Assembly: GCA_002269645.1 (NCBI GenBank)
Contig: NIVC01000036.1
Span: 372,001 to 436,000, forward strand
DNA length: 64,000 bases
Direction of reading: 5' to 3'
From: Macrostomum lignano
Lineage: Eukaryota
The notes under the pieces were generated by a model that saw only the letters and a list, made by a program, of their open reading frames with translations, made no database searches and was not told the DNA's origin. Numbering within the stretch: position 1 is the first letter of the stretch; each line of letters opens with the position of its first letter. The translations under genes and the position numbers were made by a program. This document shows, piece after piece, positions 4,101 through 54,150 of the stretch.

Positions 4101-5072
<972 letters not shown>

Positions 5073-5192
5073 GATAAAACTTGAAACCAAGCAAATATAA
5101 AATATAAATGGTTTCAGAAACAATAAAGCTTCAAAATCTTCAACAAAGAGCTGCAGGACCCAGACGGCAATAAAGGAGAACCAGCCGGTCAA

Positions 5193-8000: not shown

Positions 8001-9331
8001 AGAGCTTACAGCTACAGCTTACAGCTACAGCTTACAGCTACAGCTACAGCTTACAGCTACAGCTTACAGCTACAGCTTACAGCTACAGCTTACAGCTACA
8101 GCTTACAGCTACAGCTACAGCTTACAGCTACAGCTTACAGCTACAGCTTACAGCTACAGCTACAGCTTATAGCTACAGCTTACAGCTACAGCTAAAGCTT
8201 ATAGCTACAGCTTACAGCTACAGCTTACAGCTACAGCTTACAGCTACAGCTTACAGCTACAGCTTACAGCTACAGCTTACAGCTACAGCTTACAGCTACA
8301 GCTTACAGCTACAGCTTACAGCTTACAGCTAAAGCTTATAGCTACAGCTTACAGCTACAGCTAAAGCTTATAGCTACAGCTTACAGCTACATATTACAGC
8401 TACAGCTTACAGCTACAGCTTACAGCTACAGCTTACAGCTACAGCTTACAGCTACAGCTTACAGCTACAGCTTACAGCTACAGCTTACAGCTACAGCTTA
8501 CAGCTACAGCTTACAGCTACAGCTTACAGCTTACAGCTAAAGCTTATAGCTACAGCTTACAGCTACAGCTAAAGCTTATAGCTACAGCTTACAGCTACAG
8601 ATTACAGCTACAGCTTAGAGCTACAGCTACAGCTTTTAGCTACATCTTATAGCTACAGCTTATAGCTACAGCTTACAGCTACAGCTTACAGCTACAGCTT
8701 ACAGCTACAGCTTACAGCTACAGCTTACAGCTACAGCTTACAGCTACAGCTTACAGCTACAGCTTACAGCTACAGCTTACAGCTTACAGCTAAAGCTTAT
8801 AGCTACAGCTTACAGCTACAGCTAAAGCTTATAGCTACAGCTTACAGCTACAGATTACAGCTACAGCTTACAGCTACAGCTTACAGCTACAGCTTACAGC
8901 TTACAGCTAAAGCTTATAGCTACAGCTTACAGCTTACAGCTAAAGCTTATAGCTACAGCTTACAGCTACAGCTAAAGCTTATAGCTACAGCTTACAGCTA
9001 CAGATTACAGCTACAGCTTAGAGCTACAGCTACAGCTTTTAGCTACATCTTATAGCTACAGCTTATAGCTACAGCTTACAGCTACAGCTTACAGCTAGAG
9101 CTTACAGCTACAGCTTACAGCTACAGCTTACAGCTACAGCTTACAGCTACAGCTTACAGCTACAGCTTACAGCTACAGCTTACAGCTACAGCTTACAGCT
9201 ACAGCTTACAGCTACAGCTTACAGCTACAGCTTACAGCTACAGCTTACAGCTACAGCTTACAGCTACAGCTTACAGCTACAGCTTACAGCTACAGCTTAC
9301 AGCTACAGCTTAGTTACAACCTACAGCTTAC
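8001..9331. repeat. 13-bp minisatellite (AGCTTACAGCTAC)
   Basis: About 1.3-kb array; a diagnostic variant block recurs at ~8631 and ~9034 (403-bp internal duplication). Confidence 0.97.
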
Positions 9332-9844: not shown

Positions 9845-10142
9845 GGAGGGGGGCCTAGCCCAGTGGTCTAGCGCGACGCTCTGTGCTTGGCCCAGGCTCG
9901 ATTCCAAGTGCAGTCACTTTAATTTTAAAGCCAATTAAAGCCAACCCCCAAGGCACAGTGTGAAGTGTACATGCCTAACGATAAAAAAGTTCGGTCCACT
10001 GTACACTCCTGTGTGAGTGTGTGCCAGTGCGTATGACTGCTAAGGGGAGTCAGTGGAATGGGTAGTACTCCTCTCGCTGGTTGTGACAATGTCGCTCAAA
10101 GTGAACCAGGTGCACAATGCCCATGCCTCTAATTAAAAATTG
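9845..10142 (+). mobile_element. tRNA-derived SINE, family A, copy 1
   Basis: A-box TAGCCCAGTGG (9856-9866), B-box GGCTCGATTCC (9895-9905); 12-bp TSD GGGCCATAGACA at 9833-9844 and 10143-10154; three more homologous copies in the window. Confidence 0.85.
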
Positions 10143-11922: not shown

Positions 11923-12282
11923 AGGGGGTCATAGCCTAGTGGTAGCGCAGCTGCTCTGGTGTGCCAGCAATCCAGGCTTGATTCCAAGTGCAGTCACATT
12001 AATTTGGGGCTGAATTCGAATTTTGGCTTGGCTCTGCTCATGCAATTAACAGCCTTGAGAGCCAACCCACTAAGGCGCAGTAAAGTGTACATGCCTAACA
12101 ATAAATAAATTTAGGGCCGCTGTACACTCTTGTGTGAGTATGTGCCTGCGTACAAATCTGCACGCTTGCATGCCTGCTCAGGGGAGTCAGTGGAATGGGC
12201 AGTAATGCTTCTTGCGGGTTGTGTGCCCATGTTGCTTAAAGTGCACCAGGGTACACACAACCCCCTGCCTCTATTTATATTA
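11923..12282 (+). mobile_element. tRNA-derived SINE, family A, copy 2
   Basis: A-box TAGCCTAGTGG, B-box GGCTTGATTCC, shared body (AAGTGCAGTCAC...GGGGAGTCAGTGGAATGGG); 14-bp TSD TATGGTTGGTCAAA at 11909-11922 and 12283-12296. Confidence 0.87.
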
Positions 12283-14443
12283 TATGGTTGGTCAAATAGC
12301 CAAACTGACTTTACAACCTTGACTTTTATTGGGCAATATCTTGCCCTGCCACTGTCTCACACTTTATAAACTAAAAAATAAACCACTTTTTTGCTTTCTG
12401 AACTTAGGCTTGGTGAATATTTTTAAGCTGCCAAAACTTTGCTTGATTTGCATTTAATGTTTTTATTTCATATGAATATTTCACGATTTTCAAAAAAAGA
12501 AGATTTTAGAATATTCCTAGAAAAGGCTATCAAAAAGAAATAGATAGATTATCAAAATGAATTATTAATTTACTTACTAAGAAACATATAAATATTCCTA
12601 ATAAATTATATAAATACCTATAAGTTGCCCATTAATATGAATACACTAAAATATTTGAAATTATTTAGGCCTAAAATTATTACAATATATGAAACATATT
12701 AAAGTAAAACTTTATATGTACTTATAACATTTTCAAATTATATTTATAATATTAGGCCTAATATAGAAACTATATACTGAAATATATAATTTATATATAA
12801 AATATTGGCACCTTTTGGCCTTAAAAAGCAATAAACAAATTTTAATACAATATTACTCATTTGTTTTGGCCTAGTAGTATCTTTTAGGAAATTTGAACAA
12901 ACTTTAATATCAATACTAGAGGTCACAAAATCCTAGATTCTGTCAATCCCAGGATTGATATTTTTCTAGCACCTTGTTGTAAATGTTACGACAGCTAAAG
13001 GGGTAATGCTAGTCTGGTAATCTAATATATTTAACATTTTAGACTATCTAATATATATCACTATCATTATTGATTACTAGGGGCCTATGCAAAGCAATAT
13101 GAATGTATATACATATATTACATACTATATAATAGTACTAGTAGTATGCACATTGCAAAACAAATGTATATGACTCATGGACATGGTTGTGGAGTTGTTG
13201 GCCCATGGCATGAAGCACACTCACAAGGAGTCACAAGGACTCACAGTCACAACATAAGTCACAACCTGAACCTGAACCTACTACTGCCTAGGCATTCATA
13301 TTGTCACTTGTCAGTCTAGAGTCTAGACTCACAACAACAAGTTCAAACTTTAAAATCAAATCTCAATATTAAATGATTTAAACAAGACTCAACTCAAACA
13401 ACATAAAGACCTAACAAAGTGGGCAATGGAGAATGGACATGTATGCATGTATGTTCCATATTTGAACTAACTGCCATTTGATAATAAAATACTTGCTATA
13501 TTATATTAGACATTATAAAAACATAGCATTAAAATTCTGGGTTTAAATCCTGACCCATGAATCCTAGAAAAAGCCCTAAATCCCAAAATCCCAGGATTGT
13601 GACCCTTAGGGGTGGCCTAATCAGTACTAAAATAACAATTATAACCAAGGCCAAAGTCTAAGTTGTGAAACAAATATATTCTAGCAAAACAGCTATCACC
13701 AAAGACACTAGTCTTATTACCAAAATGACCTCTGCCTGCCAAAATGACCTCTGACTGAAATGTCTTGCTACCAAAATGACTAGGTAGGCCTAGGCCTAGT
13801 TAGTATATAGGACTTAATGCATGTGAATTTGTTAAATACCCAACTGATCAAGCCAATCTAGCTAGGGGAAGAGACCATTAGACGTAGCCCATTAAGTTTG
13901 CATTTGCAATAAGCTTATACTTATTTCAATCAATATAGCATCCTAAGATGATGGTGGCAGAAAAAACACTCTAAATATTAAAACGGTTTTTAAAAAATTA
14001 GATCTTATTCGTAGCCTAGCTTGATTCTTAGCAGTTACATCTATAATCTTAATTCCTAAGGTGTCCACACTTTTGAGTATCAGTGCTCTTTGGTACCCAG
14101 AATTTCGGTACCCAAGGTTGCTTTTTGGTGCTTGAAGAATACATACCCTCTTCTTGGTCTTGGGATCCATATTAATCTAGATAATACATGCACACGGTAG
14201 ACCTTTTTAAATCGTTTTACAAGACATCAAACAGAATAACAAATCCAGTTAAGTTTTTATAAAAAAATATTATAAAAGTAAGTAAAAAGCCTTTCCTATG
14301 CTTAAAAGAAATAAGTGATCATAATTTTTTTCTTTGAAAATAATTTTTTAAGTGCTAATATTGTTTTATACACACTTTTAACATGGCATACTCCAACATT
14401 TTTTGTGCCTTTTGTTTTCTATAGACTATTGAATGCTTCCGCA

Positions 14444-22740
<8,297 letters not shown>

Positions 22741-24927: not shown

Positions 24928-26794
24928 ATGCACCCAAAAATATTAATCTTCGTATCGATATTTTCTGCAGTCCATAGTCAGCAGGTAATTGTGTTTTAGC
25001 TGTTAAATCATCCTAAGTATAGAATTAAGAAACTGTTTGCTAGTATGCATGTACTCACTGCTAATGTGCCGCTCTCAGGTAACTTGCGTGAAGCAGATAA
25101 ACAACTGCAAATGTGAGACCAGCTCGGGAAAGTTTATCGATCTGTCACCGATAGCCAGTGCTAGCGGTTTTCAATTCAAAAGGATTCTGGGACCGAATCG
25201 GAACTGGGTGTACTCTTACAATCCGTGCACTGGTGTTCAATGCGAGTCTAGCAGTGACGCGGCTAGTTGTCAGAATTCCGCTGCGGGCTCCCAGGTGAGA
25301 CAATCTTGTCTGTTTATTGATTTAACCTCAATCCAAGAGGGCTGATGGAGGTGCAAATGACCGGTGGGACCAGAGTTTACATGCTCTAGTGCAATGTGTC
25401 TCAATTTGTCTGCAGCTTGAAGTCCCATGTCCCTCAAACCTCTTACTGCAGGTGTCGTTTATAAGTTTTAGTGCTCTGAGGACCAGAGCGTCTCTTACAT
25501 AGGGAGAGCTAAAAGATTTGGGGGAGCAATTTGGGGTGGGTGCTTGCTATCTGGGGGTGCTTGCTGTCTGGGGGATGCTTGCTATTTGGGGGGGGGTGCT
25601 TGCTATCTAGGGGTGCTTGCTATCTGGGGGATGCTTGCTATCTGGGAGTGTTTGCTATCTGGGGATCGTTGTTATCTAGGGGTGCTTGCTATCTGGGGGT
25701 GCTTGCTATCTGGGGATCCTTGCTATCTGGGGGTGCTTGCTATCTGGGGATCCTTGCTATCTGGGGGTGCTTGCTATCTGGGGATCCTTGCTATCTGGGG
25801 GTGTTTGCTATCTGGGGATCGTTGTTATCTAGGGGTGCTTGCTATCTGGGGGATGCTTGCTATCTGGGGGTGCTTGCTATCTGGGGATCCTTGCTATCTG
25901 GGGGTGTTTGCTATCTGGGGATCCTTGTTATCTAGGGGTGCTTGCTATCTGGGGGATCCTTGTTATCTAGGGGTGCTTGCTATCTGGGGATCCTTGTTAT
26001 CTAGGGGTGCTTGCTATTTGGGGGATGCTTGCTATCTGGGGGTGCTTGCTATCTGGGGATCCTTGCTATCTGGGGGTGTTTGCTATCTGGGGATCCTTGT
26101 TATCTAGGGGTGCTTGCTATCTGGGGGATGCTTGCTATTTGGGGGGTGCTTGCTATTGGGGGGTGCTTGCTAGCTGGGGATGCTTCTATTTAGGGAGAAT
26201 GCCTGTTATCAGGTTGAAGGATCAAATGAAGCATTCCGTGCTGTAGAGAGCCAAAAAAGGCAGGTATTGAAGCAACCCAACCCTGTCCTTCTTCAGGAGT
26301 TCCTGCTAGGCTTGCAGAGCACGGCCAAGTTTGGTTACGGCAGCACCTACGGTTTGTACATCAAGTACGACAATAAGCAGAGTGGCGGGATCATCCGGGA
26401 GTCCATGGTCAGTCTGGTCTGCTCGCCGGACGCCACGGACAAGTTTGAGCCCACCGATGATGGAGGAATTTCGAGTCCGTTTATATTCCACAGTAAGCTG
26501 ACTTCGAAGCACGCCTGTGAGGTAGACGGTGGAGGTGGCGGCGGCAGCGGTGGCGGCGGCATGAGCGGCGGGGACGTTCTGATCATCATAGTGCTGGTCC
26601 TGCTGGTTGTCTACCTAGCAGGCGGCTTCGCTGTAAACGTTTTTCTATTGAAGAAGACGGCCAATTTGCAGGCGTTGCCAAACTTGAATTTCTGGATTTC
26701 TGTGCCCGGCTACGTCAAGGATGGAGCGACGTTTACCGCGGCTAAAGTGAGAGGCTTGGCAACTGGGAGCAAACAGAACTATGAGAATATCTGA
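24928..26794 (+). CDS. Cation-dependent mannose-6-phosphate receptor / ATG27-like (MRH-domain) type I membrane protein, 256 aa, 3 exons
   Basis: Exons 24928-24984 (signal peptide), 25079-25294, 26297-26794. Cys pattern CKC...IDLSP...YSYNPC...VSLVC...LTSKHAC, TM segment, conserved YLAGG...LPNLNFW...VKDG, C-terminal YENI sorting motif. Confidence 0.85.
25535..26190. repeat. Intronic ~17-bp G-rich minisatellite (GGGGGTGCTTGCTATCT)
   Basis: Tandem copies in intron 2 of the M6PR-like gene. Confidence 0.94.
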
Positions 26795-27868: not shown

Positions 27869-29839
27869 TCAGACTCCGCCCTCATTCTGCGCAGTCACCA
27901 CCAGCTCCATGTTCACATCTAAGTAGTTCTCAGCAAGCCGCCTAGACAGGGTGTTGTGCTCGCACAGAGTCTCGCCCTCGGCTGGTCCGTACTCGACGCC
28001 GGGTCTGAGCAGCTGGGCCATTCTATAGATGGCGAACGCCTGGAAACAGGAGGCCACCTTTACTGGCGCTCCGCCTGAGACGCTGTAGTTGCCAAGCCGA
28101 TCGGCCAAGTCCGAGTCGGACATTCCCGTGTCGGAAAAGTGCCTCGTTTTGAATGTCGTCAAGGTGCAGGGGTCGTATAGACGATTGAGAAAGCGAGTTC
28201 GAGCGCAAAGAGAGTCGAGTTTCGGTCGGGTTGCGAAGTAGTACAGGCCCTGAATTTTGAGAGGCAGTGAATATTATTTAGCCGTTTAAAGAGCAGAGAG
28301 ATTCTGCAAGATAGCCAATGGTTTCTTGAGCTTTTGAGAGGCGTATCCATGTTTTAAAGGACGTTTGCAACGCTTTCGCAACATTCGTCCCGTCACAATC
28401 GTCACTCATACACACGCTCACACAGAGTTTACACCGGCCCTTTGACTTTCTAATAGTGGCTTTTCGAACTACTTGTACTTGCTCGTAGTTGATGTTTTCA
28501 GGGATGTTTTGTATCGCATGCGGGTGCGCTAGGAGGCTACGCGTTGACGCTTTTCCTCGGCATACCTGCAGAATATTCTGAATAGGCCAGGAAGCAAAAG
28601 TCAGATCGGGATCCGTGACAATCAGCAGAGTGGCATTGGACGATTGCCGCTTAGCATAGTCAAGGTAGACATTCCGCAGGGCCGACATGATCAGCGTTCG
28701 GTCCCGTTTCTCCCCTGCCGAGCGACGCATCGACCAGCCGGGCCGGTGCGAGCGGCCGGAGCTGCCGTAGACGAGTTTCGGCTGGCAACGGGCTGCCGCA
28801 TTGACGCGCCCGCAGCCGAGCACAGATACTCGGCGATCTTGCCTGGCCCAGTTGACCAGACGCGCCCGAGTGTCGTCGTGACTGTCGCCTTCGACTAGAA
28901 CAAATCGAGCGTCGGCAAATGCAGCTGAAAGGCGCAGCAAGTTGTCGATGTTGACAAAGAGAGCGTCCGTGGACGCCGAATCGCGGACAGTCGCCGCGAA
29001 CACCACCGATTGACGTCGAGCCCAGTTCGCACCGATTGCAACGCGTCTTTGAAAACTTAGCTCTTCAGTTGAGAGCCGAAGCACGGGAAGTCGCCACTCA
29101 TTGTCGAATTTGTGCATCGAAAGTCGACGGCGGTTTTGTATAACCCGATTTAAACTTTCAGCTTCGTCTAAAGATGTTGAAATTGATGCTTGTGATCGCT
29201 CAAAGTTCTGCTCATGTTCGTTGTAAGCTGAGCCGCTTGAGTCGAGCTGTTGCTTAGTGTTTCTGTGTTGATGTGTTTTTAATTATACGAGCATCTCGAT
29301 AAACTACTAGATATGAGATAGATATGAAAACGAACAAACGAACGAACGAACGAACGAACGAACGAACGAACGAACGAACGAACGAACGAACGTTGAAACG
29401 AACGAACGATTGATGAAACGAACGAACGCATGAATGATCAAATTAACGAAGTGGGTAATGAAACTGGACTAGCTGTTTAAATGCTTACAGGTATAAATAA
29501 TTGCATGAGCACACTAGTGTACGCACCTTATAAGAACAAAATTACTTACCTGGCCGCAGGTGGATCAGACCAAAAGCTCAGAGGAAGCAGCTCGGCACCT
29601 GTCTTTTCATTCACCAGTGGACGTCTTATAATCAGCAAAAGAAGAGTCACTGCCAGAATCATCGCCAAAAGCTGCATCAGATAGCACAGCCGAAGAACTG
29701 AAGGCGAACTGTGCCGACCGATTCTCGTCACTAAAAATCCACTGAAGCTGCTCAGCTTGAGTCTCATCCTTGATGCAGCATTTAATCGTTCTTTCCTCCT
29801 TTTCATCCGTTCTTTTTCTTGTTTATTAAATAGACACAT
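27869..29839 (-). CDS. Type II membrane GT-A fold glycosyltransferase (CAP59/GT69-like or bacterial GT2-like), ~455 aa, 3 exons
   Basis: Exons 29550-29839 (start codon uncertain; TM LCYLMQLLAMILAVTLLLLII), 28566-29262, 27869-28249, phase-consistent. Motifs VVFAATVRD, VEGDSHDDT, MSALRNVYL, DxD (TDPDL), YDP, VKVASCFQAFAIY, CEH. Confidence 0.8.
29328..29430. repeat. (GAAC)n microsatellite
   Basis: In intron 1 of the glycosyltransferase gene. Confidence 0.93.
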
Positions 29840-30249
29840 ATTTTTTGCAAATAGCAAAATATTTTCAGTAACCAATCGCTTTCGCCCACTGCTCACTGCA
29901 ATCCATCTATCACAGCGTCGCTTACTAATGCCTTTTCAGCTATGAAAAATTCAAAAAAGGCCCTCGAGATTGGCAATTTTTAAGTGCCATTACGATAATG
30001 GAAATGGGCATTAACGAAAAAAGTCATCGTCACAATAGAGGCGAGAACAGATTTTTTGCTTTTGCCTCGAGATGCGAACGCTTTTAAAACGCATCATAAA
30101 ATTTTTCGTCATAAAATTAGAGAAAAATATTTATTTGACTTTTTCAGTAAAAATGAAATATTTCACGAATCAACACAATTGTCTTGTTTCTTCTGCTGTT
30201 TTGTCAGCGAAATAAATACTCCAGGAAAAAAAATATCAACTCTCGCAGA

Positions 30250-31703
30250 TTATTCGTTGACGGTCTCCGAGGCACTCGGCGATGGCGAAGTTGACGATCC
30301 TTCGCCAGACGGCGAGCCGGCGCCGCCTTCGCCTTCTTCGCCTCCGGCCGGCTCCTCGTCGATGACGCGTAGAACGGCGGCAGCGGCCTCGCGTTCCATA
30401 GGCGTTGACTTGCTGACGAAGATGCTCGAACCGTTGGTGAGGCCGCAGCCGACTGCGGTAACGTCGCCAAGGAGCATCTGGTGCGGAATGCCAGTCGGCG
30501 AGGACAGCGTGCCCGCCGCCGGGTCGCCGAAGAAACCGTCGCGGCAGAACACAATGTCGGAGTCGGACTCAATGCCGAGACGACAGGAGAAGGCCCTCAG
30601 GGCGGCCTTGATTGGGGCACCCTTCTGCAGGCGGAATCGATAGCCCAGAGTCCACTTGCGCAGCTTCTCCTCGCTAAATAGGCTTTCGGATTTGGCCACC
30701 TGCCGATGGGAAAGAGGATTGGATTTTAAGGATGGGACTTTAAGGATGGGATTTTAAGGATGGGATTTTAAGGATGGGATTTTAAGGATGGGATTTAAAG
30801 TATAGGATTTCGAAGCTGGACTATTATAGGTGGGATTTTAACGATGGAATTTCAAGGATAAGATTTTAAGGATGGGATTTTAAGGATGGGATTTTAAAGA
30901 TGGGATTTTAAAGATGGGATTTTAAGGATGGGATTTTAAGGATGGGATTTAAAGTATAGGATTTTAAGTGTAGGATTTCGAAGCTGGACTTATATAGGTG
31001 GGATTTTAACGATGGAATTTCAAGGATAAGATTTTAAGGGTGAGATTTTAAGGATGGGATTTTAAGAATGGGATTTGAAGGATGGAATTTGAAGGATGGG
31101 ATTTTAAGGATGGGATTTTAAGGATGGGATTTTATGGTTGGGATTTTAAGGATGGGAATTTAAGGATGGGATTTTAAGGTTGGGATTTCAAGGATGGGAT
31201 TTTAGAAACGGGATTTTAAGGATGGGATTTTAAGGATCGGATTTAGGTTTGGTATTTTAAGGATGTGATTTTCAAGATGGGATTTTAGGAATAGGATCTC
31301 AAGGATGGGATTTTAAGGATAGGATTTTAAGGATGGAATATAAGGTTAGGATTTAGGGACGTTAGTTAAAGTTTTTTCTTGCCCTCACCTGCACCAGACT
31401 ATTAAGAACGGCACGATAATCAGGTATCCGAATGCGGAAGTACATAAAATTAAACTTCGAAGCCGTCAGCTTGCTCTGCTCGGCCAGTTTGCCAGATATA
31501 GCGGAGTTATTGTCCTGGTCCATCCAGGAGAACACGTCATCGAGGGGATTTAATCCCGAAGTCAGCGCTTTGTGCACCTGGGCGAGCTGCCGGTTCTCGC
31601 GGACGCGCTGCAGAGCTGGCGCAAATGGAACCGGAGCCATCTGGGGCACAGGATTTAGCTCTCCTGGACAGGATACGGAAGCTGGAACGTGCAGCTGATG
31701 CAT
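30250..31703 (-). CDS. Uncharacterised protein with putative SUMO/ubiquitin-like C-terminal domain (5' end uncertain)
   Basis: Exons 31389-31703 and 30250-30699 joined by a phase-0 GT-AG intron; FRLQKGAPIKAALRAFSCRLG...IVFCRDG...GLTNGSSIFV matches a SUMO-like spacing; acidic tail. Confidence 0.5.
30712..31358. repeat. Intronic 14-bp minisatellite (AAGGATGGGATTTT)
   Basis: Fills intron 30700-31388. Confidence 0.93.
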
Positions 31704-31959: not shown

Positions 31960-33220
31960 AGGGAGAGACAGGTAGGGAGAGACAGGTAGGGAGAGACAGG
32001 CAGGGAGAGACAGGCAGGGAGAGACAGGTAGGGAGAGACAGGCAGGGAGAGACAGGTAGGGAGAGACAGGCAGGGAGAGACAGGCAGGGAGAGACAGGCA
32101 GGGAGAGACAGGCAGGGAGAGACAGGCAGGGAGAGACAGGCAGGGAGAGACAGGCAGGGAGAGACAGGCAGAAAGAGACAGGCAGGGAGAGACAGGCAGG
32201 GAGAGACAGGCAGGGAGAGACAGGCAGGGAGAGACAGGCAGGGAGAGACAGGCAGGGAGAGACAGGCAGGGAGAGACAGGCAGGGAGAGACAGGCAGAAA
32301 GAGACAGGCAGGGAGAGACAGGCAGGGAGAGACAGGCAGGGAGAGACAGGCAGGGAGAGACAGGCAGGGAGAGACAGGCAGGGAGAGACAGGCAGGGAGA
32401 GACAGGCAGGGAGAGACAGGCAGGGAGAGACAGGCAGGGAGAGACAGGCAGGGAGAGACAGGCAGGGAGAGACAGGCAGGGAGAGACAGGCAGGGAGAGA
32501 CAGGCAGGGAGAGACAGGCAGGGAGAGACAGGCAGGGAGAGACAGGCAGGGAGAGACAGGCAGGGAGAGACAGGCAGGGAGAGACAGGCAGGGAGAGACA
32601 GGCAGGGAGAGACAGGCAGGGAGAGACAGGCAGGGAGAGACAGGCAGGGAGAGACAGGCAGGGAGAGACAGGCAGGGAGAGACAGGCAGGGAGAGACAGG
32701 CAGGGAGAGACAGGCAGGGAGAGACAGGCAGGGAGAGACAGGCAGGGAGAGACAGGCAGGGAGAGACAGGCAGGGAGAGACAGGCAGGGAGAGACAGGCA
32801 GGGAGAGACAGGCAGGGAGAGACAGGCAGGGAGAGACAGGCAGGGAGAGACAGGCAGGGAGAGACAGGCAGGGAGAGACAGGCAGGGAGAGACAGGCAGG
32901 GAGAGACAGGCAGGGAGAGACAGGCAGGGAGAGACAGGCAGGGAGAGACAGGCAGGGAGAGACAGGCAGGGAGAGACAGGCAGGGAGAGACAGGCAGGGA
33001 GAGACAGGCAGGGAGAGACAGGCAGGGAGAGACAGGCAGGGAGAGACAGGCAGGGAGAGACAGGCAGGGAGAGACAGGCAGGGAGAGACAGGCAGGGAGA
33101 GACAGGCAGGGAGAGACAGGCAGGGAGAGACAGGCAGGGAGAGACAGGCAGGGAGAGACAGGCAGGGAGAGACAGGCAGGGAGAGACAGGCAGGGAGAGA
33201 CAGGCAGGGAGAGACAGACA
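31960..33220. repeat. 14-bp purine-rich minisatellite (GGGAGAGACAGGCA)
   Basis: About 90 near-identical copies. Confidence 0.98.
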
Positions 33221-33524
33221 GTAATACGAATTTTCAAGTCATATTACTTGTAGCAGCATTTCACACTAAAATAGGTAATAATTCAAACAGAATCCAAGTA
33301 CTTAAGCCGCGTGTATTTATGATAAGCCAGCAAGCCATCTGAGCGAGAAAAAGCTTCTTGCACCAAGCAAATAAGATAATGGCTTGAGGAAAATAAGAAA
33401 CAAGTTAAATCTTCTGGGTTTGATTCACAATAATGGACGGTTACTAAATAATAGATTATTTTACAGCACCGACGTAGTTTGATTATGAAAGGCAGTATAA
33501 GAAGCCACGGGGTATGGGAAGGTT

Positions 33525-38345: not shown

Positions 38346-41300
38346 CTAAACAACACTAAACTAAACAACACTAAACTAAACTAAACTAAACTAAACTAAA
38401 CTAAACTAAACTAAACTAAACTAAACTAAACTAAACTAAACTGGACCAAACTAAAATGGACTAACTAAACTAAACTAAATAAGAAAAAACTGAACTAAGC
38501 TACTGTAAACCGAACTACACTAAACTAACCTAATTGAACTTAAATTAAACAAAACTCATATTAAACTCTCTGTGCATGGGGGGGGGGCTTGGCCCTCATG
38601 GGTGTTAATCGCACAACAACCCTTTCCTAACCCTGCCATTTTACCTTCCTAAGAATTTCATCAGCTCCTCTTGCACCAGCGGACACCGGGATCCGCCGCC
38701 CATCAGTAGCGTATCGCTGCTGCTACTACGGGTGACGTCACCAGCCAATGACGTCATCATTTCAACTGGTCGCCTCAGTCTGTTCAACAAGTCCGCAACC
38801 TTCGTTCTCAGCTGGTCTCGCGTCATCGAACCAGCTCGCCGATTGGCGCTGAGCACCCGAAATAATTGGCCGGCTTCTACTCGGGCCTTAGCAACCGAAC
38901 TAGCGTCCATAGTAACCGGTGATTTTCCGGCGTTAATTAATCGTTCAATAAAATCGAAGGTGCCAAGTGCCGGGTCGTAACCAGTGCCGAGAATTCGCAG
39001 CAGGTAGGTTTGAAAATTCTTGGAACCGGTCACTTTCTGATAAGCTAAAAATATATTAAGGGTTTCAATATCTTTTTAGATGTACGTTATTGTATGTAGA
39101 TGGTAGATTTTGAAGGCCTGTTATTGTATGTAGATGGTAGATTTTGAAGGCCTGTTATTGTATGTAGATGGTAGATTTTGAAGGCCTGTTATTGTATGTA
39201 GATGGTAGATTTTGAAGGCCTGTTATTGTATGTAGATGGTAGATTTTGAAAGCCTGTTATTGTATGTAGATGGTAGATTTTGAAGGCCTGTTATTGTATG
39301 TAGATGGTAGATTTTGAAGGCCTGTTATTGTATGTAGATGGTAGATTTTGAAGGCCTGTTATTGTATGTAGATGGTAGATTTTGAAGGCCTGTTATTGTA
39401 TGTAGATGGTAGATTTTGAAGGCTTGTTATTGTATGTAGATGGTAGATTTTGAAGGCCTGTTATTGTATGTAGATGGTAGATTTTGAAGGCCTGTTATTG
39501 TATGTAGATGGTAGATTTTGAAGGCCTGTTATTGTATGTAGATGGTAGATTTTGAAGGCCTGTTATTGTATGTAGATGATAGATTTTGAAGGCCTGTTAT
39601 TGTATGTAGATGGTAGATTTTGAAGGCTTGTTATTGTATGTAGATGGTAGATTTTGAAGGCCTGTTATTGTATGTAGATGGTAGATTTTGAAGGCCTGTT
39701 ATTGTATGTAGATGGTAGATTTTGAAGGCCTGTTATTGTATGTAGATGGTAGATTTTGAAGGCCTGTTATTGTATGTAGATGATAGATTTTGAAGGCCTG
39801 TTATTGTATGTAGATGGTAGATTTTGAAGGCCTGTTATTGTATGTAGATGGTAGATTTTGAAGGCTTGTTATTGTATGTAGATGGTAGATTTTGAAGGCT
39901 TGTTATTGTATGTAGATGGTAGATTTTGAAGGCCTGTTATTGTATGTAGATGGTAGATTTTGAAGGCCTGTTATTGTATGTAGATGGTAGATTTTGAAGG
40001 CCTGTTATTGTATGTAGATGGTAGATTTTGAAGGCCTGTTATTGTATGTAGATGGTAGATTTTGAAGGCCTGTTATTGTATGTAGATGGTAGATTTTGAA
40101 GGCCTGTTATTGTATGTAGATGATAGATTTTGAAGGCCTGTTATTGTATGTAGATGATAGATTTTGAAGGCCTGTTATTGCATCTAGATGATATAGTTTG
40201 AAGGCCTGTTATTGCATGTACGAGTAGATGATAGATTTTGAAGGCCTGTTATTGTATCTAGATGACAGATTGCCTACTTGCTCTCAGGGCACTTACATGC
40301 AGCAGTGCTGACAGTAAAAGATGCGCCTAGATCGAAGAATGTACGCGACTGAGGCTTGGAACCCAGACTTGACAAGATGCTGTTGCCATAGTTCAGAGCA
40401 ACTGAAACCGAATAAGCGAGGAATCCATTTTGGTTGAAAGTTATCACTTCACCGGATCAAGCTACTTATAGTACCTAAACCAATTTCCTTAAAACTGACA
40501 AGCATAAGGACACAATTAACATCGAACTGACACTTGAAATGATGCACCTGACAACCAACTGACACTCAAAGCTACGGCTCTGACAACCAACTGACACTCA
40601 AAGCTACGCCTCTGACAACCCACTGACACCCAGAGCTACGTTTCTGACAACCCACTGACACTCAAAGCTACGTCTCTGACAACCAACTGACACCCAAAGC
40701 TACGTCTCTGACAACCCACTGACACCCAAAGCTACGTCTCTGACAACCAACTGACACCCAGAGCTACGTCTCTGACAACCCACTGACCCAAAGCTACGTC
40801 TCTGACAACCCACTGACACTCAAAGCTACGTCTCTGACAACCAACTGACACCCAAAGCTACGTCTCTGACAACCCACTGACACTCAAAGCTACGTCTCTG
40901 ACAACCAACTGACACCCAAAGCTACGTCTCTGACAACCAACTGACACCCAAAGCTACGTCTCTGACAACCCACTGACACTCAAAGCTACGTCTCTGACAA
41001 CCAACTGACACCCAGAGCTACGTCTCTGACAACCAACTGACACCCAAAGCTACGTTTCTGACAACCCACTGACACTCAAAGCTACGTCTCTGACAACCAA
41101 CTGACACCCAAAGCTACGTCTCTGACAACCCACTGACACCCAAAGCTACGTCTCTGACAACCCACTGACACCCAAAGCTACGTCTCTGACAACCAACTGA
41201 CACCCAAAGCTACGTCTCTGACAACCAACTGACACCCAGAGCTACGCCTCTGACAGCCTCAGTTTGGCCACAACTGACCTGCAGCGTTGTTGTTGACCAG

Positions 41301-43921: not shown

Positions 43922-46900
43922 ATGTCTGTTGATGGAATAGACTACCAGCGAATTGCCAAGAAGTTGGAGAAAATGACTACCAAGAATAAAATTGTAAGTA
44001 GGCCTAGAAAGTTAACCTCTGGCTCTAAAGCTGTTTTGATTTTATTTTCATGCCTCATGTCTGCAACTATTGCCTATTAGGCCTTCTCAAGAAAGTATTT
44101 GACTATTAGTATTATAATCATCAAGGACTAGGCAAAAAAGTTAGAGTATATTAGACTTGTAGTATATATATCCATTTTTGGTCTAGGCCTTGCATCATTT
44201 ACATGACAACTTTAAAATATAGGGGCCTATTTAATTTAATAAAATTTTATAAAATTTTCTTACTAAGCTTATATATACTACATTAGTATAAAAACCTAAC
44301 CTAGGCCTAGTATTATTAGTATTAGTATGTAAGTAAGGTCTATTCTAGACTAAATTTTTATTTACTAAAGAAAGGCATAAAGCTAGTAATAACATCTTAG
44401 ATTACAACTTCAATTATGCTTGTTGAAATAAATACAAAATAAATGATACATAGATGATTAATAGTTGTCTTCATCTTTTTGGTTTAGTTTAGCTAAATTT
44501 TTTTAGAATGTTAGGCCTTATATTATATTATTGTTTATTAGACCTAACTTGATTAAATCAATGATTGGAATCATAACTCATAAGGAATTTATTTAATAAG
44601 GGTCTTATTCTTAGCCAATCTTAGGCCTATGACTTGCCAATATCAATACGCCTAATATAAAAAGCTAATTTTAATAAAAACTAAGCCTAATGAATAACTT
44701 TGCAATGCAATTACTAAAATAAAAATAAAGAAAAACTTAAAAAGTATTTTGTATTGCTTGTATTAGATAATGATAAACTAGGAGGGCCTATATTGTCTCT
44801 TATAAAGATGGCTCTTAGAAACTTTTAAAAAACTATTCTCAAAAAATCTTTGTTTTGTATTTCTAAAATAATAATAAAATGTTAAGTTCTCTTACAAAAA
44901 ATCATTTAAATATAAGCTTCAAGATAGAGACCCAAACTTTAATAAAGCTTTGGTCAAAGGAAATAGAAAGTAAATTTTTAAATGTATACTTTAATAAAAT
45001 TATTTCTTATTCTTAGTATTTTGAAAGTACTTAGTGGATCTTTTTTATTTACCAAAAGAGGTAGATACCCCTTTAGCTTCTCTCTTCAATTATACATATT
45101 ATATATATTCATATATACAGAATAATATAGAGGCAAAAGACTATGTTTTACCCTAATATGCCACTTCATTCAGAATGCTATTTTTCCTTAACTCTCCAAT
45201 TGCCTCCTTCAGGGTTCTTGCTCTTCATTTAATTTGCTTGTGCTTTGAGTGCAACTAAGTGACATTATTACACAACTAGCAAAATGCATTACCACCCATT
45301 CTGCCAACTCTCTTGAGCAGGCATGCAAGAATATAGACATGTATTTATTCATATTAACCTAGGCACCACTACTACACACTGACACAAGAGTGTAGAGCAG
45401 ACCTAACTTGATTGTTAGGCATGCACACTTCACTGTGCCATTGGGTTGGCCTTTAAGGCCAGTAATTGCACAAGCAGAGCCAAGCCGAGATTCCAATTAA
45501 GCTATCCACAAATTAATGTAACTGCACTTGGAATCAAGCCTGGGCCGCTGGAACATAAGAATGCCATGCCACTTTAGACCACTGGGCTATGGCCCCTACA
45601 GTTTTATTATTTGCTAAAAATGTAGAGGTTAATCCGTATACCTTGAAAAGAACCATTGCACCAAACTGTCTAAATCTCCCAGGATGAGGCCAAGGTGGCC
45701 CGCTACCTGTCCCAGCTGCGCGAGGCCACCATCACCATAGCTGTGCTGCAGAAAACCGGCCTTGGCATTATTGTGAATCGTCTGCGACGCGGACTCAAAT
45801 CCGACACTCTGCTGTCCGAAGCCCGACAGCTTATTAAGAAATGGAAGAAGCTGTTGGATTCTGCCCAGCAACAACAGCAGGCCGCTGCCGCTGCTGCGCC
45901 GTCACCGACAGCTGATGAGAATGGCAGCGGAGCCGACACCACTGAGGCTAAACGACCTCGCGTCGATGCAGACGAAGAGGCCAGTCCGAATGGAAGCAGC
46001 GAAGGCGCCGCCACCGCCATAGCCGCTCCAGCCGTCACTTTTAAAGAGTCCGAGAGACTGCGAACCACCGATTCAGTTCGGCTGAAATGCCGCGAAATGC
46101 TGCAACAGGTTAGCAGTTTTTTGTAAAGTACTTTCTCTTCTTTTATTTGAAAATATTCGCAATATTTCCTGTCTATTATAGATTTTATTTATGTCCTAAT
46201 CAGTGATCCCCACACACCTGTCCTAATCAGTGATCCCGACACACCTGTCCTAATCAGTGATCCCCACACACCTGTTCTAATCAGTGATCCCCACACACCT
46301 GTTCTAATCAGTGATCCACACACCTGTCCTAATCAGTGATCCCCACACACCTGTCCTAATCAGTTATCCCCAGACACCTGTCCTAATCAGTGATCCCCAT
46401 TCCCCACACACCTGTCCTAATCAGTGATCCCCACACACCTGTCCTAATCAGTGATCCCCACACACCTGTCCTAATCAGTGATCCCCATTCCCCACACACC
46501 TGTCCTAATCAGTGATCCCCACACCTGTCCTAATCAGTGATCCCCACACACTTGTCCTAATCAGTGATCCCCACACACCTGTTCTAATCAGTGATCCCCA
46601 CACACCTGTTCTAATCAGTGATCCCCATACACCTGTCCTAATCAGTGATCCCCACACACCTGTTCTAATCAGTGATCCCCACACACCTGTTCTAATCAGT
46701 GATCCACACACACCTGTCCTAATCAGTGATCCCCATTCCCCACACACCTGTTCTAATCAGTGATCCCCACACACCTGTCCTAATCAGTGATCCCCACACA
46801 CCTGTCCTAATCAGTGATCCCCACACACCTGTCCTAATCAGTGATCCCCACACACCTGTCCTAATCAGTGATCCCCATACACCTGTCCTAATCAGTGATC

Positions 46901-47933
46901 CCCACACACCTGTTCTAATCAGTGATCCCCACACACCTGTCCTAATCAGTGATCCCCACACACCTGTTCTAATCAGTGATCCACACACCTGTCCTAATCA
47001 GTGATCCCCACACACCTGTCCTAATCAGTGATCCCCACACACCTGTCCTAATCAGTGATCCCCATTCCCCACACACCTGTCCTAATCAGTGATCCCCACA
47101 CACCTGTCCTAATCAGTGATCCCCACACACCTGTCCTAATCAGTGATCCCCACACACCTGTCCTAATCAGTGATCCCCACACACCTGTCCTAATCAGTGA
47201 TCCCCACACACTTGTCCTAATCAGTGATCCCCACACACCTGTCCTAATCAGTGATCCCCACACACTTGTCCTAATCAGTGATCCCCACACACCTGTCCTA
47301 ATCAGTGATCCCCACACACCTGTTCTAATCAGTGATCCCCATTCCCCACACACCTGTCCTAATCAGTGATCCCCACACACCTGTCCTAATCAGTGATCCC
47401 CACACACCTGTCCTAATCAGTGTTCCAATGATAATAATTAAGTATTCAAGTTCTCCCAACTCCCCACCCGAACGCAGGCACTCGAATCGGACACGATCCC
47501 ATCCGGAGCATACGAGCCCAATTACCTTGCCGCCGAGATTGAGACCTGCGTCCACCTGGAGACTGGCTCGAAGCTGGACATGAAATACAAGAATCGAATC
47601 CGCAGCCGGGTGATGAACCTTCGCGACACGAAGAATCCCAATTTGCGCTACTGCGTCCTCATGGGGAATATCTCCCCGGCGCAGTTTGCCAAGATGAGCG
47701 CGGAAGAGATGGCATCGGACGATATGCGCAAGCTCAGGGAGCGGCTGACCAAGGAAGCAATCGATGATCACCAGATGTCGATGAACAGCGGCACGTCTAC
47801 CGATATGTTGAAGTGCGGCAAGTGCAAGAAGAACAATTGCACTTATAATCAGCTGCAGACCAGATCGGCTGATGAGCCAATGACCACCTTTGTGCTGTGC
47901 AATGAGTGCGGTCACCGGTGGAAGTTTAACTAA
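43922..47933 (+). CDS. TCEA1: Transcription elongation factor S-II (TFIIS), 317 aa, 3 exons
   Basis: Exons 43922-43993, 45683-46108, 47478-47933. N-terminal domain ([14 protein letters not shown]...KKWKKLL), central [13 protein letters not shown], Zn-ribbon CGKC...[24 protein letters not shown]. Confidence 0.97.
45120..45597 (-). mobile_element. tRNA-derived SINE, family A, copy 4 (diverged)
   Basis: Minus strand reads GGGGCCATAGCCCAGTGGTCTAAAG...GGCTTGATTCCAAGTGCAGTTAC; lies in TFIIS intron 1; 3' boundary approximate. Confidence 0.75.
46193..47412. repeat. 27-bp minisatellite (CCCCACACACCTGTCCTAATCAGTGAT)
   Basis: About 44 copies filling TFIIS intron 2. Confidence 0.97.
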
Positions 47934-53958: not shown

Positions 53959-54150
53959 AGCGAAATATTTGCCTACAATGTGCAAGCGGTTTACCAATAA
54001 TTATTTAACCAATTAAGAGCTTGCTGCGTGCAAAAGCAGGTGACTTACCTGTAACAATTTTCAACAGTCTGAAAGAAACCAATCCAAGATACGAGAGAAT
54101 CTCTTCCGATGTGCTGATGCGACAATGGAAGCGGCCGTCGGTCCTACCTG

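What the first reader, a model, noticed from the sequence alone, without database searches (positions are those of the whole stretch)
27869..29839. Intron-containing glycosyltransferase of a type I associate with bacteria, giant viruses and fungi: HGT candidate
Seen: motif order VVFAATVRD - VEGDSHDDTRARLVNW - RTLIMSALRNVYL - TDPDL - YDP - VKVASCFQAFAIY - CEH. From recall this matches microbial GT-A proteins (ENDSTDNT...RLAYxRN...DLD...YDxWA...VxSAFGGLAIY...CEH) and fungal CAP59/GT69-like mannosyltransferases, not standard vertebrate Golgi GTs. The two spliceosomal introns, N-terminal TM anchor and stem show it is integrated as a Golgi-type enzyme. Inference: horizontally acquired or patchily retained enzyme that may build unusual surface or mucus glycans.
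Basis: partly seen in the sequence, partly recalled or inferred. Interest (0 to 1): 0.7.

Follow-up and report, generated by a model that had tools for sequence, protein, structure and literature searches.

The report
Giant-virus-type glycosyltransferase gene in an animal
This is an intact, intron-containing animal gene for a membrane-anchored sugar-transferring enzyme; its only animal relatives found are in the flatworm Macrostomum lignano and its next closest relatives are in giant viruses, so it was probably captured from such a virus.

Summary
On the minus strand, three exons (29767-29550, 29262-28566, 28249-27869) join across two GT..AG introns into a 431-aa protein. It carries every quoted motif in the stated order, one N-terminal membrane anchor and a stem. 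With a deep alignment it models confidently as a GT-A glycosyltransferase (pLDDT 89.8).

The window protein does not match Pfam PF11735 (CAP59/GT69) or any other Pfam family. The closest named relatives (38-47% identity) are a multi-copy family in Macrostomum lignano. The four copies examined there have no intron.

Scores then drop sharply to about 320-aa proteins from metagenomes and IMG/VR giant-virus genomes. All five long contigs I inspected look like giant-virus DNA. The best structural match is a Marseillevirus glycosyltransferase (TM 0.79/0.82). Many viral members pass the PF11735 cut-off. Prokaryotic relatives were five unverified MAG contigs.

The gene sits among ordinary animal genes (meckelin, an ATG27-like exon, an AIG1 GTPase), has host-like GC3, and no other virus-like gene was found in the window.

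Best reading: an old capture from a giant-virus-type source into a macrostomid-like flatworm lineage, followed by duplication and, in this lineage, intron gain. The direction of transfer, the donor sugar and expression are untested.

The parts
27869..29767 (-). Whole coding gene, from ATG to stop, with 3 exons and 2 introns; it encodes a 431-aa type II membrane GT-A glycosyltransferase. It is single copy in the window.
   Evidence: Exons join in frame. Homologues at E = 1e-72. tblastn of the protein against the window finds only this locus.
29768..29839 (-). Possible 5' extension. The stretch is AT-rich, so it may be 5'UTR or promoter instead.
   Evidence: The ORF runs 29546..29896. No homology support either way.
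29550..29767 (-). Exon 1 (218 nt): cytoplasmic tail, membrane anchor and start of the stem.
   Evidence: Ends ...GCGGCCAG before the donor GTAAGT.
29627..29683 (-). Signal-anchor / transmembrane segment, residues 29-47 (YLMQLLAMILAVTLLLLII). Arg residues flank it on both sides.
   Evidence: Kyte-Doolittle 19-residue mean 2.63; it is the only hydrophobic segment. M. lignano and viral homologues also have an N-terminal hydrophobic segment.
29263..29549 (-). Intron 1 (287 nt, GT..AG, GC 0.37). It holds a run of short 4-nt repeats (GAAC-type on the + strand as read).
   Evidence: Unique in the window. Predicted only; no transcript evidence.
28566..29262 (-). Exon 2 (697 nt): the stem and the N-terminal two thirds of the catalytic domain.
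28866..28895 (-). VEGDSHDDTR, residues 196-205: the acidic nucleotide-sugar-binding motif that follows a beta strand. E197, S200, D202 and R205 are invariant in the 71-sequence family alignment. G198 replaces an Asn present in all 70 other sequences.
   Evidence: It aligns with the equivalent motif of the GT2 enzyme sll0501 in the PDB profile search.
28605..28613 (-). D290-P-D292: a DxD motif at the end of a predicted beta strand, the presumed divalent-metal ligand.
   Evidence: D292 is invariant and D290 is conserved in at least 90% of the 71 sequences. Strand E165-169 of the model precedes it. Coordinates.
28250..28565 (-). Intron 2 (316 nt, GT..AG, GC 0.45). It splits the conserved block ...NILQ | GLYYFA.... 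It is absent at this position from the four M. lignano genomic copies examined.
   Evidence: Unique in the window.
27869..28249 (-). Exon 3 (381 nt including the stop): the C-terminal third of the catalytic domain.
27956..27964 (-). C401-E402-H403: the Cys is invariant and Glu and His are conserved in at least 90% of the family. Inferred roles: His as a third metal ligand or catalytic residue, Cys in a disulfide.
   Evidence: The roles are inferred from general GT-A knowledge and were not tested.
27890..29069 (-). GT-A catalytic domain, residues 138-425; it spans intron 2.
   Evidence: AF2 model m62f471d7d2ca, pLDDT 89.8, pTM 0.91. Foldseek gives GT-A enzymes in the PDB and a Marseillevirus glycosyltransferase with TM 0.79/0.82.

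Best explanation
The locus is an intact single-copy nuclear gene of an animal, probably a macrostomid-like flatworm. It encodes a type II membrane protein made of a short cytoplasmic tail, one signal-anchor helix, a stem of about 90 residues and a lumenal GT-A glycosyltransferase domain.

How it most likely works (inferred): it sits in the Golgi or ER membrane. It binds a nucleotide sugar through the VEGDSHDDT motif and a divalent metal through D290-x-D292, possibly with H403. It then transfers the sugar to a glycan, protein or lipid acceptor. Five Cys are conserved in the ten-sequence alignment A4 (C223, C232, C320, C373, C401); two of them, C232 and C401, are invariant across all 71 family sequences. 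This fits disulfides in a lumenal domain. By analogy with the only characterised distant relatives, fungal GT69 Cmt1-type alpha-1,3-mannosyltransferases, the donor may be GDP-mannose; this is a weak inference.

Origin (inferred from distribution and a rough tree): the gene belongs to a small clade of the window gene, at least six M. lignano paralogue clusters and a few unnamed environmental sequences. That clade sits on a long stem within a family otherwise found in giant viruses (Nucleocytoviricota, including Marseillevirus-type genomes).

The most likely history is one old horizontal capture from a giant virus, or from the same gene pool, into an ancestor of this flatworm lineage. Composition then adapted to the host, the gene duplicated, and the window's lineage gained two spliceosomal introns.
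For: Shown:
- The gene model is in frame with canonical splice sites.
- The fold is GT-A.
- There is a single membrane anchor.
- The window protein keeps 33 of the 38 family columns that are at least 85% conserved, not counting the start Met.
- An exhaustive profile search of 1.84 billion representatives gave 1261 relatives. The top hits were M. lignano (549-314 bits). Scores then dropped to 142 bits and below for unnamed proteins of about 320 aa.
- All five long contigs carrying such relatives are dense, intron-free and giant-virus-like. They carry RNA polymerase Rpb2 split by an HNH endonuclease, Rpb5, SNF2 and PIF1 helicases, RING proteins, kinases and many ORFans.
- There are 26 IMG/VR loci, including complete 347-380 kb viral genomes and GVMAGs, at 22-33% identity.
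- The best structural match is a Marseillevirus LCMAC102 glycosyltransferase: E = 2.4e-25, TM 0.79/0.82, 27% identity.
- The viral homologues also have an N-terminal membrane anchor.
- In an NJ tree of 172 sequences, the flatworm-type clade was recovered in 200 of 200 bootstraps. Its stem length is 0.45 against a median internal branch of 0.04. With midpoint rooting it sits seven nodes deep among environmental and viral sequences.
- The gene is linked to host genes that have introns: meckelin, an ATG27-like exon and an AIG1 GTPase.
- GC3 is 0.60 against 0.60-0.74 in the neighbouring genes.
- No other region of the window resembles the 37 viral or MAG loci.
- Three annotated M. lignano paralogues are single-exon genes on host contigs of up to 439 kb, one of them next to a tubulin gene, and a fourth, inverted copy in L031 aligns without a gap.

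Precedent: giant-virus-mediated transfer of a glycosyltransferase to eukaryotes has been reported for kinetoplastid FUT1 (PMC9472816, citing Irwin et al. 2022).
Against: - Thirty clusters were looked up and only the M. lignano ones were named. Other animals or protists could therefore be hidden among the environmental sequences.
- The tree is distance-based and midpoint-rooted. It has no fungal GT69 outgroup, and the sister relationship to env_P0009 has only 59% support.
- The long stem branch could pull the clade to the wrong place.
- The direction of transfer cannot be read from these data. Virus to animal, animal or protist to virus, or both from a third source all remain possible.
- There is no expression evidence.
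- The window protein alone has Gly where all 70 other family members have Asn, inside the nucleotide-binding motif.
- The window's species is not identified. The best hits of its meckelin exon are only 45% identical and none is from M. lignano.
Confidence: 0.68

Rival explanations
1. Vertical inheritance with massive loss. An ancient opisthokont or eukaryotic GT69-like gene was kept only in this flatworm lineage among animals, and giant viruses captured their copies from eukaryotic hosts.
For: - PF11735 is defined on fungal (opisthokont) enzymes, and the viral relatives match it.
- The flatworm clade has a long stem and deep internal divergence (38-47% identity among members), so it is old.
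- Host-like composition and introns fit long residence.
Against: - No other named animal appeared in a search that read 1.84 billion representatives.
- The flatworm profile scores viral-type proteins at 72-142 bits. The fungal-based PF11735 model gives flatworm proteins at most 23.6 bits and the window protein nothing.
- The four M. lignano copies examined are intronless, which is unusual for an ancient animal gene.
Confidence: 0.17
2. A decaying or non-functional relic. The reading frame is still open, but the enzyme is inactive or not expressed.
For: - The window protein uniquely has Gly at a position where all 70 other family members have Asn, inside the nucleotide-binding motif.
- There is no transcript evidence.
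- The protein is too divergent to match Pfam.
Against: - The reading frame stays open over 431 codons across three exons with canonical GT..AG sites.
- It keeps 33 of 38 conserved family columns, including the DxD and CEH motifs and the conserved Cys, similar to M. lignano paralogues at 32-35 of 39.
- The model folds with high confidence.
Confidence: 0.1
3. Acquired from bacteria, as a generic bacterial GT2-like enzyme.
For: - Weak GT2 signals: 48 of 71 relatives hit PF00535 at E <= 0.01, mostly below its cut-off, and the PDB profile hit is a cyanobacterial GT2 at E = 0.07.
- Five prokaryote-labelled MAG contigs carry relatives.
Against: - Only 5 loci were found in 185,579 species genomes. All are on MAG contigs of 4-23 kb. 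Four are 24-27% identical; the fifth is a 62-residue match at 44%. They may be mis-binned viral DNA; this was not checked.
- There are no NCBIfam matches.
- The conserved Cys pattern and membrane anchor fit a eukaryotic or viral secretory enzyme.
- The scan used one exact peptide pattern, so it could miss divergent bacterial members.
Confidence: 0.03
4. Contaminant or mis-assembled viral or protist DNA, not an animal gene.
For: The nearest non-flatworm relatives are viral or environmental.
Against: - Two predicted spliceosomal introns.
- The same contiguous sequence carries intron-bearing animal genes on both sides.
- GC3 matches the neighbours.
- A dispersed SINE-like repeat and tandem arrays typical of the rest of the window surround the gene.
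- M. lignano paralogues lie on host contigs of 37-439 kb.
Confidence: 0.02

Closest known systems
Uncharacterised Macrostomum lignano proteins (BOX15_Mlig023516g2, Mlig031518g1, Mlig030790g1, Mlig008975g1, Mlig008488g1-4, Mlig033934g1; some UniProt entries are labelled 'Glycosyltransferase family 2 protein')
   Same: - Same clade: 200 of 200 bootstraps, 38-47% identity over the whole catalytic domain.
- Same membrane anchor plus stem architecture.
- Same insertion relative to the viral proteins, between the LGCG block and the RNxYLD block.
   Different: - The four M. lignano genomic copies examined have no intron; the window gene has two.
- The window gene is not an orthologue at high identity, and it has Gly for the family's invariant Asn.
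- M. lignano has many copies, including an inverted pair. The window has one.
Membrane-anchored glycosyltransferases of giant viruses (Marseillevirus LCMAC102 A0A481YUL9; homologues in 347-380 kb IMG/VR genomes and GVMAGs)
   Same: - Homologous over the full domain: tblastn E down to 6e-26 at 22-33% identity, hmmsearch down to 1.8e-36.
- Near-identical predicted fold (TM 0.79/0.82).
- N-terminal membrane anchor.
- Shared acidic motif, DxD, CEH and conserved Cys.
   Different: - The viral proteins are about 300-340 aa with a short linker. The window protein has a stem of about 90 residues and an insertion of about 10-15 residues.
- The viral genes are intronless and lie in viral genomes.
- No function has been shown for this viral family. 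The family assignment of the large IMG/VR genomes rests on genome size only, compared with 0.35-0.39 Mb for Marseilleviridae in PMC9614988.
Fungal CAZy GT69 / Pfam PF11735 CAP59_mtransfer (Cryptococcus Cmt1 and CAP59, Neurospora GT69-2, Aspergillus ClpA)
   Same: - Distant homology shown transitively: viral members pass the PF11735 cut-off, and the flatworm profile matches those members at hhalign probability 100%.
- Type II membrane architecture. Golgi localisation has been shown for the Neurospora enzyme (PMC8092235).
   Different: - The window protein does not match PF11735 at all, and M. lignano paralogues fall below the cut-off.
- Alpha-1,3-mannosyltransferase activity with GDP-mannose is known only for the fungal enzymes (PMC8092235). 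Here it is an analogy, not a finding.
- No fungal sequence could be compared directly.
Solved GT-A enzymes (human COLGALT1 GT25, 9evj; GT2 and GT27 enzymes; mimivirus R699, 9dyt)
   Same: GT-A Rossmann-like fold with a DxD motif (Foldseek probability 1.0).
   Different: Only fold-level likeness: TM no more than 0.59, 9-14% identity, and no sequence-level PDB hit.

Membership tests
GT-A fold glycosyltransferase superfamily | Single Rossmann-like alpha/beta/alpha nucleotide-binding fold | tested here: met
   AF2 model with pLDDT 89.8 and pTM 0.91. 141 PDB chains at E <= 0.001; the 50 best listed are all GT-A glycosyltransferases.
GT-A fold glycosyltransferase superfamily | DxD (metal / nucleotide-sugar) motif after a central beta strand | tested here: met
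   D290-P-D292 follows model strand E165-169. The second Asp is invariant and the first is at least 90% conserved in 71 sequences.
GT-A fold glycosyltransferase superfamily | Glycosyl transfer from a nucleotide sugar | not testable with these tools
   No biochemical data; inferred from fold and motifs only.
Pfam PF11735 CAP59_mtransfer / CAZy GT69 | Whole-protein score at or above Pfam's gathering cut-off (28.8 bits) | tested here: not met
   The window protein gives no hit even at E <= 10. M. lignano paralogues score 16.7-23.6 bits.
Pfam PF11735 CAP59_mtransfer / CAZy GT69 | Homology to sequences that do pass the PF11735 cut-off | tested here: met
   hhalign of the flatworm alignment A2 against eight PF11735-passing viral or environmental sequences (A6): probability 100%, E = 2.8e-47, 268 columns. 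63 of 71 family members hit PF11735 at E <= 0.01.
Pfam PF11735 CAP59_mtransfer / CAZy GT69 | GDP-mannose-dependent alpha-1,3-mannosyltransferase activity (Cmt1 type) | not testable with these tools
   Known for the fungal enzymes only (PMC8092235).
Pfam PF11735 CAP59_mtransfer / CAZy GT69 | Branches with fungal GT69 in a phylogeny | not tested
Giant-virus (Marseillevirus-type) membrane-anchored glycosyltransferase family | Full-length sequence homology to viral members | tested here: met
   26 IMG/VR loci with tblastn E from 6e-26 to 4e-6, covering residues about 23-303 of the 311-residue domain.
Giant-virus (Marseillevirus-type) membrane-anchored glycosyltransferase family | Close structural match to a viral member | tested here: met
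   A0A481YUL9 (Marseillevirus LCMAC102): E = 2.4e-25, TM 0.79/0.82, rmsd 3.2, 27% identity.
Giant-virus (Marseillevirus-type) membrane-anchored glycosyltransferase family | Encoded in a viral genome | tested here: not met
   It has introns and lies between animal genes, and no other virus-like gene is in the window. It is therefore a cellular homologue, not a viral gene.
Pfam PF00535 Glycos_transf_2 (GT2) | Score at or above the cut-off (23.3 bits) | tested here: not met
   No hit for the window protein. Relatives are mostly below the cut-off and match only the first ~50 profile positions.
Horizontally acquired gene in an animal genome | Physical linkage to bona fide host genes and host-type gene structure | tested here: met
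   Meckelin exons at 17932-20194, an ATG27-like exon at 26180-26794 and an AIG1 GTPase at 53038-53997 lie on the same sequence. The gene has two GT..AG introns and GC3 like its neighbours.
Horizontally acquired gene in an animal genome | Absent from other animals (patchy distribution) | tested here: inconclusive
   Only M. lignano appears among named hits of the exhaustive search.
Horizontally acquired gene in an animal genome | Nested within the donor clade with strong support in a rooted tree | tested here: inconclusive
   NJ tree: clade monophyly 200 of 200, but the sister group has 59% support, rooting is by midpoint, and there is no cellular outgroup.

The most novel reading that the evidence does not exclude
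An ancestor of macrostomid-type flatworms captured a membrane-anchored glycosyltransferase directly from a giant virus (Nucleocytoviricota). The gene was kept and multiplied into a lineage-specific family. In the window's lineage it gained two spliceosomal introns de novo. It now builds glycans that other animals cannot make.

This would be a clear case of giant-virus-to-animal gene flow. It would imply past infection of, or close contact between, such viruses and flatworms. It would also give a dated example of intron gain in a transferred gene.
Probability: 0.45. Interest if true: 0.72.

Novelty: new variant of a known kind. Interest (0 to 1): 0.55.

Why it matters
Documented transfers from giant viruses to animals are rare. 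Glycosyltransferases are the class of viral gene most often reported as co-opted by eukaryotes, for example kinetoplastid FUT1 via a giant virus (PMC9472816, citing Irwin et al. 2022).

This family offers three things:
- an animal clade whose nearest relatives are viral;
- intronless copies in M. lignano and an intron-bearing copy here, which is a natural comparison for intron gain after transfer;
- a handle on a large viral enzyme family with no characterised member, lying just outside Pfam's CAP59/GT69 model.

If the flatworm enzymes are active, they could explain lineage-specific glycans. The finding is not a new kind of system: it is a divergent GT-A glycosyltransferase.

Tried and rejected
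- Sequence search of the window protein against Pfam, NCBIfam and PDB sequences found nothing. A profile search of the PDB gave only a marginal GT2 N-terminal motif hit at E = 0.07.
- The first AF2 model, from a 4-sequence alignment, was too poor to use (pLDDT 49). It was replaced by the 71-sequence model.
- The word-indexed search with profile A3 returned only 5 proteins because of its candidate cap, so it gave no names for distant relatives.
- The genome-contig scan with A3 failed for lack of a usable pattern. It was repeated with the 10-sequence alignment A4.
- Looking up the window's own proteins in public assemblies did not work. The source assembly and species stay unknown.
- Rfam found nothing in the window.
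- The meckelin exon search identified the window as animal but gave no close species.
- Thirty clusters of relatives were looked up for organism names, and only the M. lignano ones were named.
- I tested for a larger endogenous viral region by tblastx of the whole window against 37 viral or MAG loci. Only the glycosyltransferase matched, plus a tandem repeat at 51.4-51.6 kb, so this idea was rejected.
- I tested whether the introns are copies of a repeat (introner-like). Neither intron has another copy in the window.
- Literature searches for the M. lignano gene identifiers, and for CAP59 together with giant viruses, found nothing. The tokyovirus glycosyltransferase table did not identify this family.
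- Silent versus replacement substitution rates were not computed, because at 38-47% protein identity silent sites would be saturated.
Full report
**1. The observation**

The region 27869-29839 holds a minus-strand gene. Three exons (29767-29550, 29262-28566, 28249-27869) join in frame into 1296 nt, giving 431 aa. They are separated by two GT..AG introns of 287 and 316 nt.

Intron 2 is demanded by homology. Exon 2 ends at ...NILQ and exon 3 begins GLYYFA..., which rebuilds a block that is invariant in the M. lignano paralogues of alignment A1. Reading through would shift the frame.

Intron 1 lies in the unconserved stem. It is supported by a consensus donor, an in-frame stop just upstream of exon 2, and the fact that exon 1 supplies the only hydrophobic segment (residues 29-47). 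It has no transcript support.

The gene is single copy in the window.

**2. What the protein is**

The window protein alone matches nothing in Pfam, NCBIfam or PDB sequences. The word-indexed search of 5.8 billion proteins found only three hits, all Macrostomum lignano hypothetical proteins at 38-46% identity.

A profile of the conserved domain was read against all 1.84 billion representatives. It found 1261 relatives at E <= 0.001 and 286 at E <= 1e-10.

With a 71-sequence alignment, AlphaFold2 gave a confident model with pLDDT 89.8 and pTM 0.91. Against the PDB the model is a GT-A glycosyltransferase but has no close solved relative; the best match is human COLGALT1 at TM 0.58 and 12% identity.

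Family-wide invariant or near-invariant residues sit where GT-A enzymes bind nucleotide sugar and metal:
- the acidic motif VEGDSHDDT (196-204);
- D290-x-D292;
- C401-E402-H403;
- several conserved Cys.

The window protein keeps 33 of the 38 columns that are at least 85% conserved. Uniquely, it has Gly where all 70 other sequences have Asn.

**3. Who the relatives are**

The top hits of the exhaustive search are M. lignano proteins from at least six 50%-identity clusters. A few unnamed fragments from a Logan run and a JGI sample also score high.

Scores then fall from over 300 bits to 142 bits and below, for unnamed proteins of about 310-330 aa from metagenomes. I could inspect five long contigs carrying such proteins, and all five are dense and intron-free with giant-virus-type gene content:
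- RNA polymerase Rpb2 interrupted by an HNH endonuclease, an SNF2 helicase and OGFr_N (L038);
- Rpb5, a PIF1 helicase, RING and collagen-like proteins (L039);
- Fapy DNA glycosylase, an AAA ATPase, RING and other glycosyltransferases (L001);
- DUF5856 or DUF5857, kinases, NUDIX and many ORFans (L040, and L041 on a 311-kb Tara scaffold).

A scan of IMG/VR found 26 loci, including complete 347-380 kb viral genomes and GVMAGs, at 22-33% identity. Those genome sizes fall in the 0.35-0.39 Mb range given for Marseilleviridae (PMC9614988). I did not verify the family of those records.

The best structural match in BFVD is 'Glycosyltransferase [Marseillevirus LCMAC102]' (E = 2.4e-25, TM 0.79/0.82). 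Sylvanvirus and ChoanoV1 proteins follow. The viral proteins also start with a membrane anchor.

One motif scan of 185,579 prokaryotic species genomes found five loci, all on MAG contigs of 4-23 kb. I treat these as unverified.

**4. Relation to CAP59/GT69**

Sixty-three of the 71 aligned members hit PF11735 at E <= 0.01, the best at 7e-15. Viral ORFs in L004, L009, L013, L015 and L018 pass its gathering cut-off at 29.8-44.7 bits. M. lignano paralogues reach only 16.7-23.6 bits, and the window protein does not hit at all.

A profile-profile comparison of the flatworm alignment with eight PF11735-passing sequences gives probability 100% and E = 2.8e-47 over 268 columns.

I file the protein as a cellular member of a giant-virus-centred sister family of GT69, not as a GT69 member.

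What is known of GT69 comes from fungi. Cmt1 transfers mannose from GDP-mannose in alpha-1,3 linkage, and Neurospora GT69-2 is a Golgi protein (PMC8092235). No member of the viral branch has been characterised in the papers I read (PMC9614988, PMC12866637).

**5. Is it a host gene?**

Yes. The same sequence carries:
- meckelin/TMEM67 exons (Pfam E = 6e-78 and 7e-42);
- an ATG27/mannose-6-phosphate-receptor-like exon 1 kb from the gene's 3' end;
- an AIG1 GTPase.

The best hits of the meckelin exon are animal sequences at no more than 45-48% identity. GC3 of the gene (0.60) matches its neighbours (0.60-0.74), and its introns have the lower GC of non-coding sequence.

No other part of the window resembles the 37 viral or MAG loci collected. 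It is a lone gene, not a block of viral DNA.

In M. lignano the paralogues lie on contigs of 37-439 kb beside ordinary genes such as tubulin and an ankyrin-caspase protein.

**6. History**

In a neighbour-joining tree of 172 sequences and 294 columns, one clade holds the window protein, six M. lignano representatives and two unnamed sequences. It was recovered in 200 of 200 bootstraps. It sits on a long stem (0.45 against a median internal branch of 0.04). With midpoint rooting it lies seven nodes deep among environmental and viral sequences.

Its immediate sister, env_P0009, has 59% support. The next group out includes a cluster whose member lies on the virus-like contig L040. The position of the window gene inside the clade is unresolved.

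All four M. lignano genomic copies examined are uninterrupted: P0006 and an inverted neighbour, P0001 and P0002. Viral genes are intronless, so the simplest reading has three parts:
- one old capture;
- duplication within the lineage;
- gain of two introns in the window's lineage.

Neither intron is a copy of a repeat found elsewhere in the window.

**7. Limits**

- No fungal GT69 sequence could be placed in the tree.
- The tree is distance-based.
- The long stem could mislead placement.
- The direction of transfer is not shown.
- Expression, localisation and the sugar transferred are all inferred.
- The source species is unknown. A tRNA-derived SINE-like repeat shared with an M. lignano contig hints at a related flatworm, but the meckelin search returned no M. 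lignano hit.

**8. Verdict**

It is only indirectly right on CAP59/GT69, not supported for bacteria, and untested for glycan function. Giant-virus-mediated transfer of glycosyltransferases to eukaryotes has precedent (PMC9472816), so this is a new variant of a known kind and of moderate interest.

Noticed in passing
window 9852-10067, 11932-12215, 17245-17526, 45273-45565; L031 11548-11811: A dispersed repeat of about 280 bp has at least four copies in the window at 76-94% identity to each other. One end looks like a tRNA-derived SINE head with box-B-like GGCTCGATTCC on the reverse strand. A copy at 69-84% identity lies in the M. lignano contig, between the two inverted glycosyltransferase genes. 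This hints that the window's species is related to Macrostomum. It is not proof, because SINE core domains can be widely shared.
   Followed up: partly
window, 32 arrays, e.g. 101-2262, 4104-5074, 8003-9312, 18532-19379, 31960-33221, 39086-40271, 46192-47426, 57416-58845: About 39% of the window (25.3 kb) is tandem micro- and minisatellite arrays with periods of 4-308 bp, many over 1 kb long. These produce most of the long 'ORFs' in the six-frame list.
   Followed up: partly
window about 14300-22700 (+): A meckelin/TMEM67 gene. Exons at 17932-18500 and 19400-20194 match Pfam PF09773 (E = 7e-42 and 6e-78). They are separated by an intron filled with a (GTCT)n array at 18532-19379. Best database hits are only about 45% identical (reptiles, fish, a snail, a rotifer), so the source species has no close annotated relative.
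   Followed up: partly
window 26180-26794 (+): An exon with an ATG27 / cation-dependent mannose-6-phosphate-receptor-like domain and a C-terminal membrane segment. It converges tail to tail with the glycosyltransferase gene about 1 kb away.
   Followed up: no
window 53038-53997 (-): A single long ORF for an AIG1/GIMAP-type GTPase (Pfam PF04548, E = 1.7e-36) with a coiled-coil-like, Lys/Glu/Gln-rich tail. The exact protein is not on record in the public gene-call collection.
   Followed up: no
L031 10001-11152 (+) and 12418-13404 (-): M. lignano carries two copies of the glycosyltransferase as an inverted, tail-to-tail pair about 1.3 kb apart. Only the first is in the listed gene calls.
   Followed up: partly
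P0012 (M. lignano UniProt A0A1I8FAJ4, 646 aa): A protein named 'RING-type E3 ubiquitin transferase' ends with a 69-residue piece of this glycosyltransferase domain (profile positions 178-246 at residues 578-646). This is probably a merged or truncated gene model from an older assembly.
   Followed up: no
window 28890-28892 (residue G198): The window protein has Gly where all 70 other aligned family members, viral and flatworm, have Asn. The position is inside the nucleotide-binding motif. It could change donor binding or signal relaxed constraint.
   Followed up: partly
L038 1-2305: On one giant-virus-like environmental contig, the RNA polymerase second-largest-subunit gene is split by an HNH endonuclease ORF. 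Rpb2 domains 1-6, then HNH_3, then Rpb2 domain 7 appear as separate calls.
   Followed up: no
window 30250-30699 (-): A 149-codon ORF ending about 480 bp upstream of the glycosyltransferase start, with an acidic Gly/Ser/Pro-rich tail. It has no Pfam match and is possibly the last exon of the next gene on the same strand.
   Followed up: no
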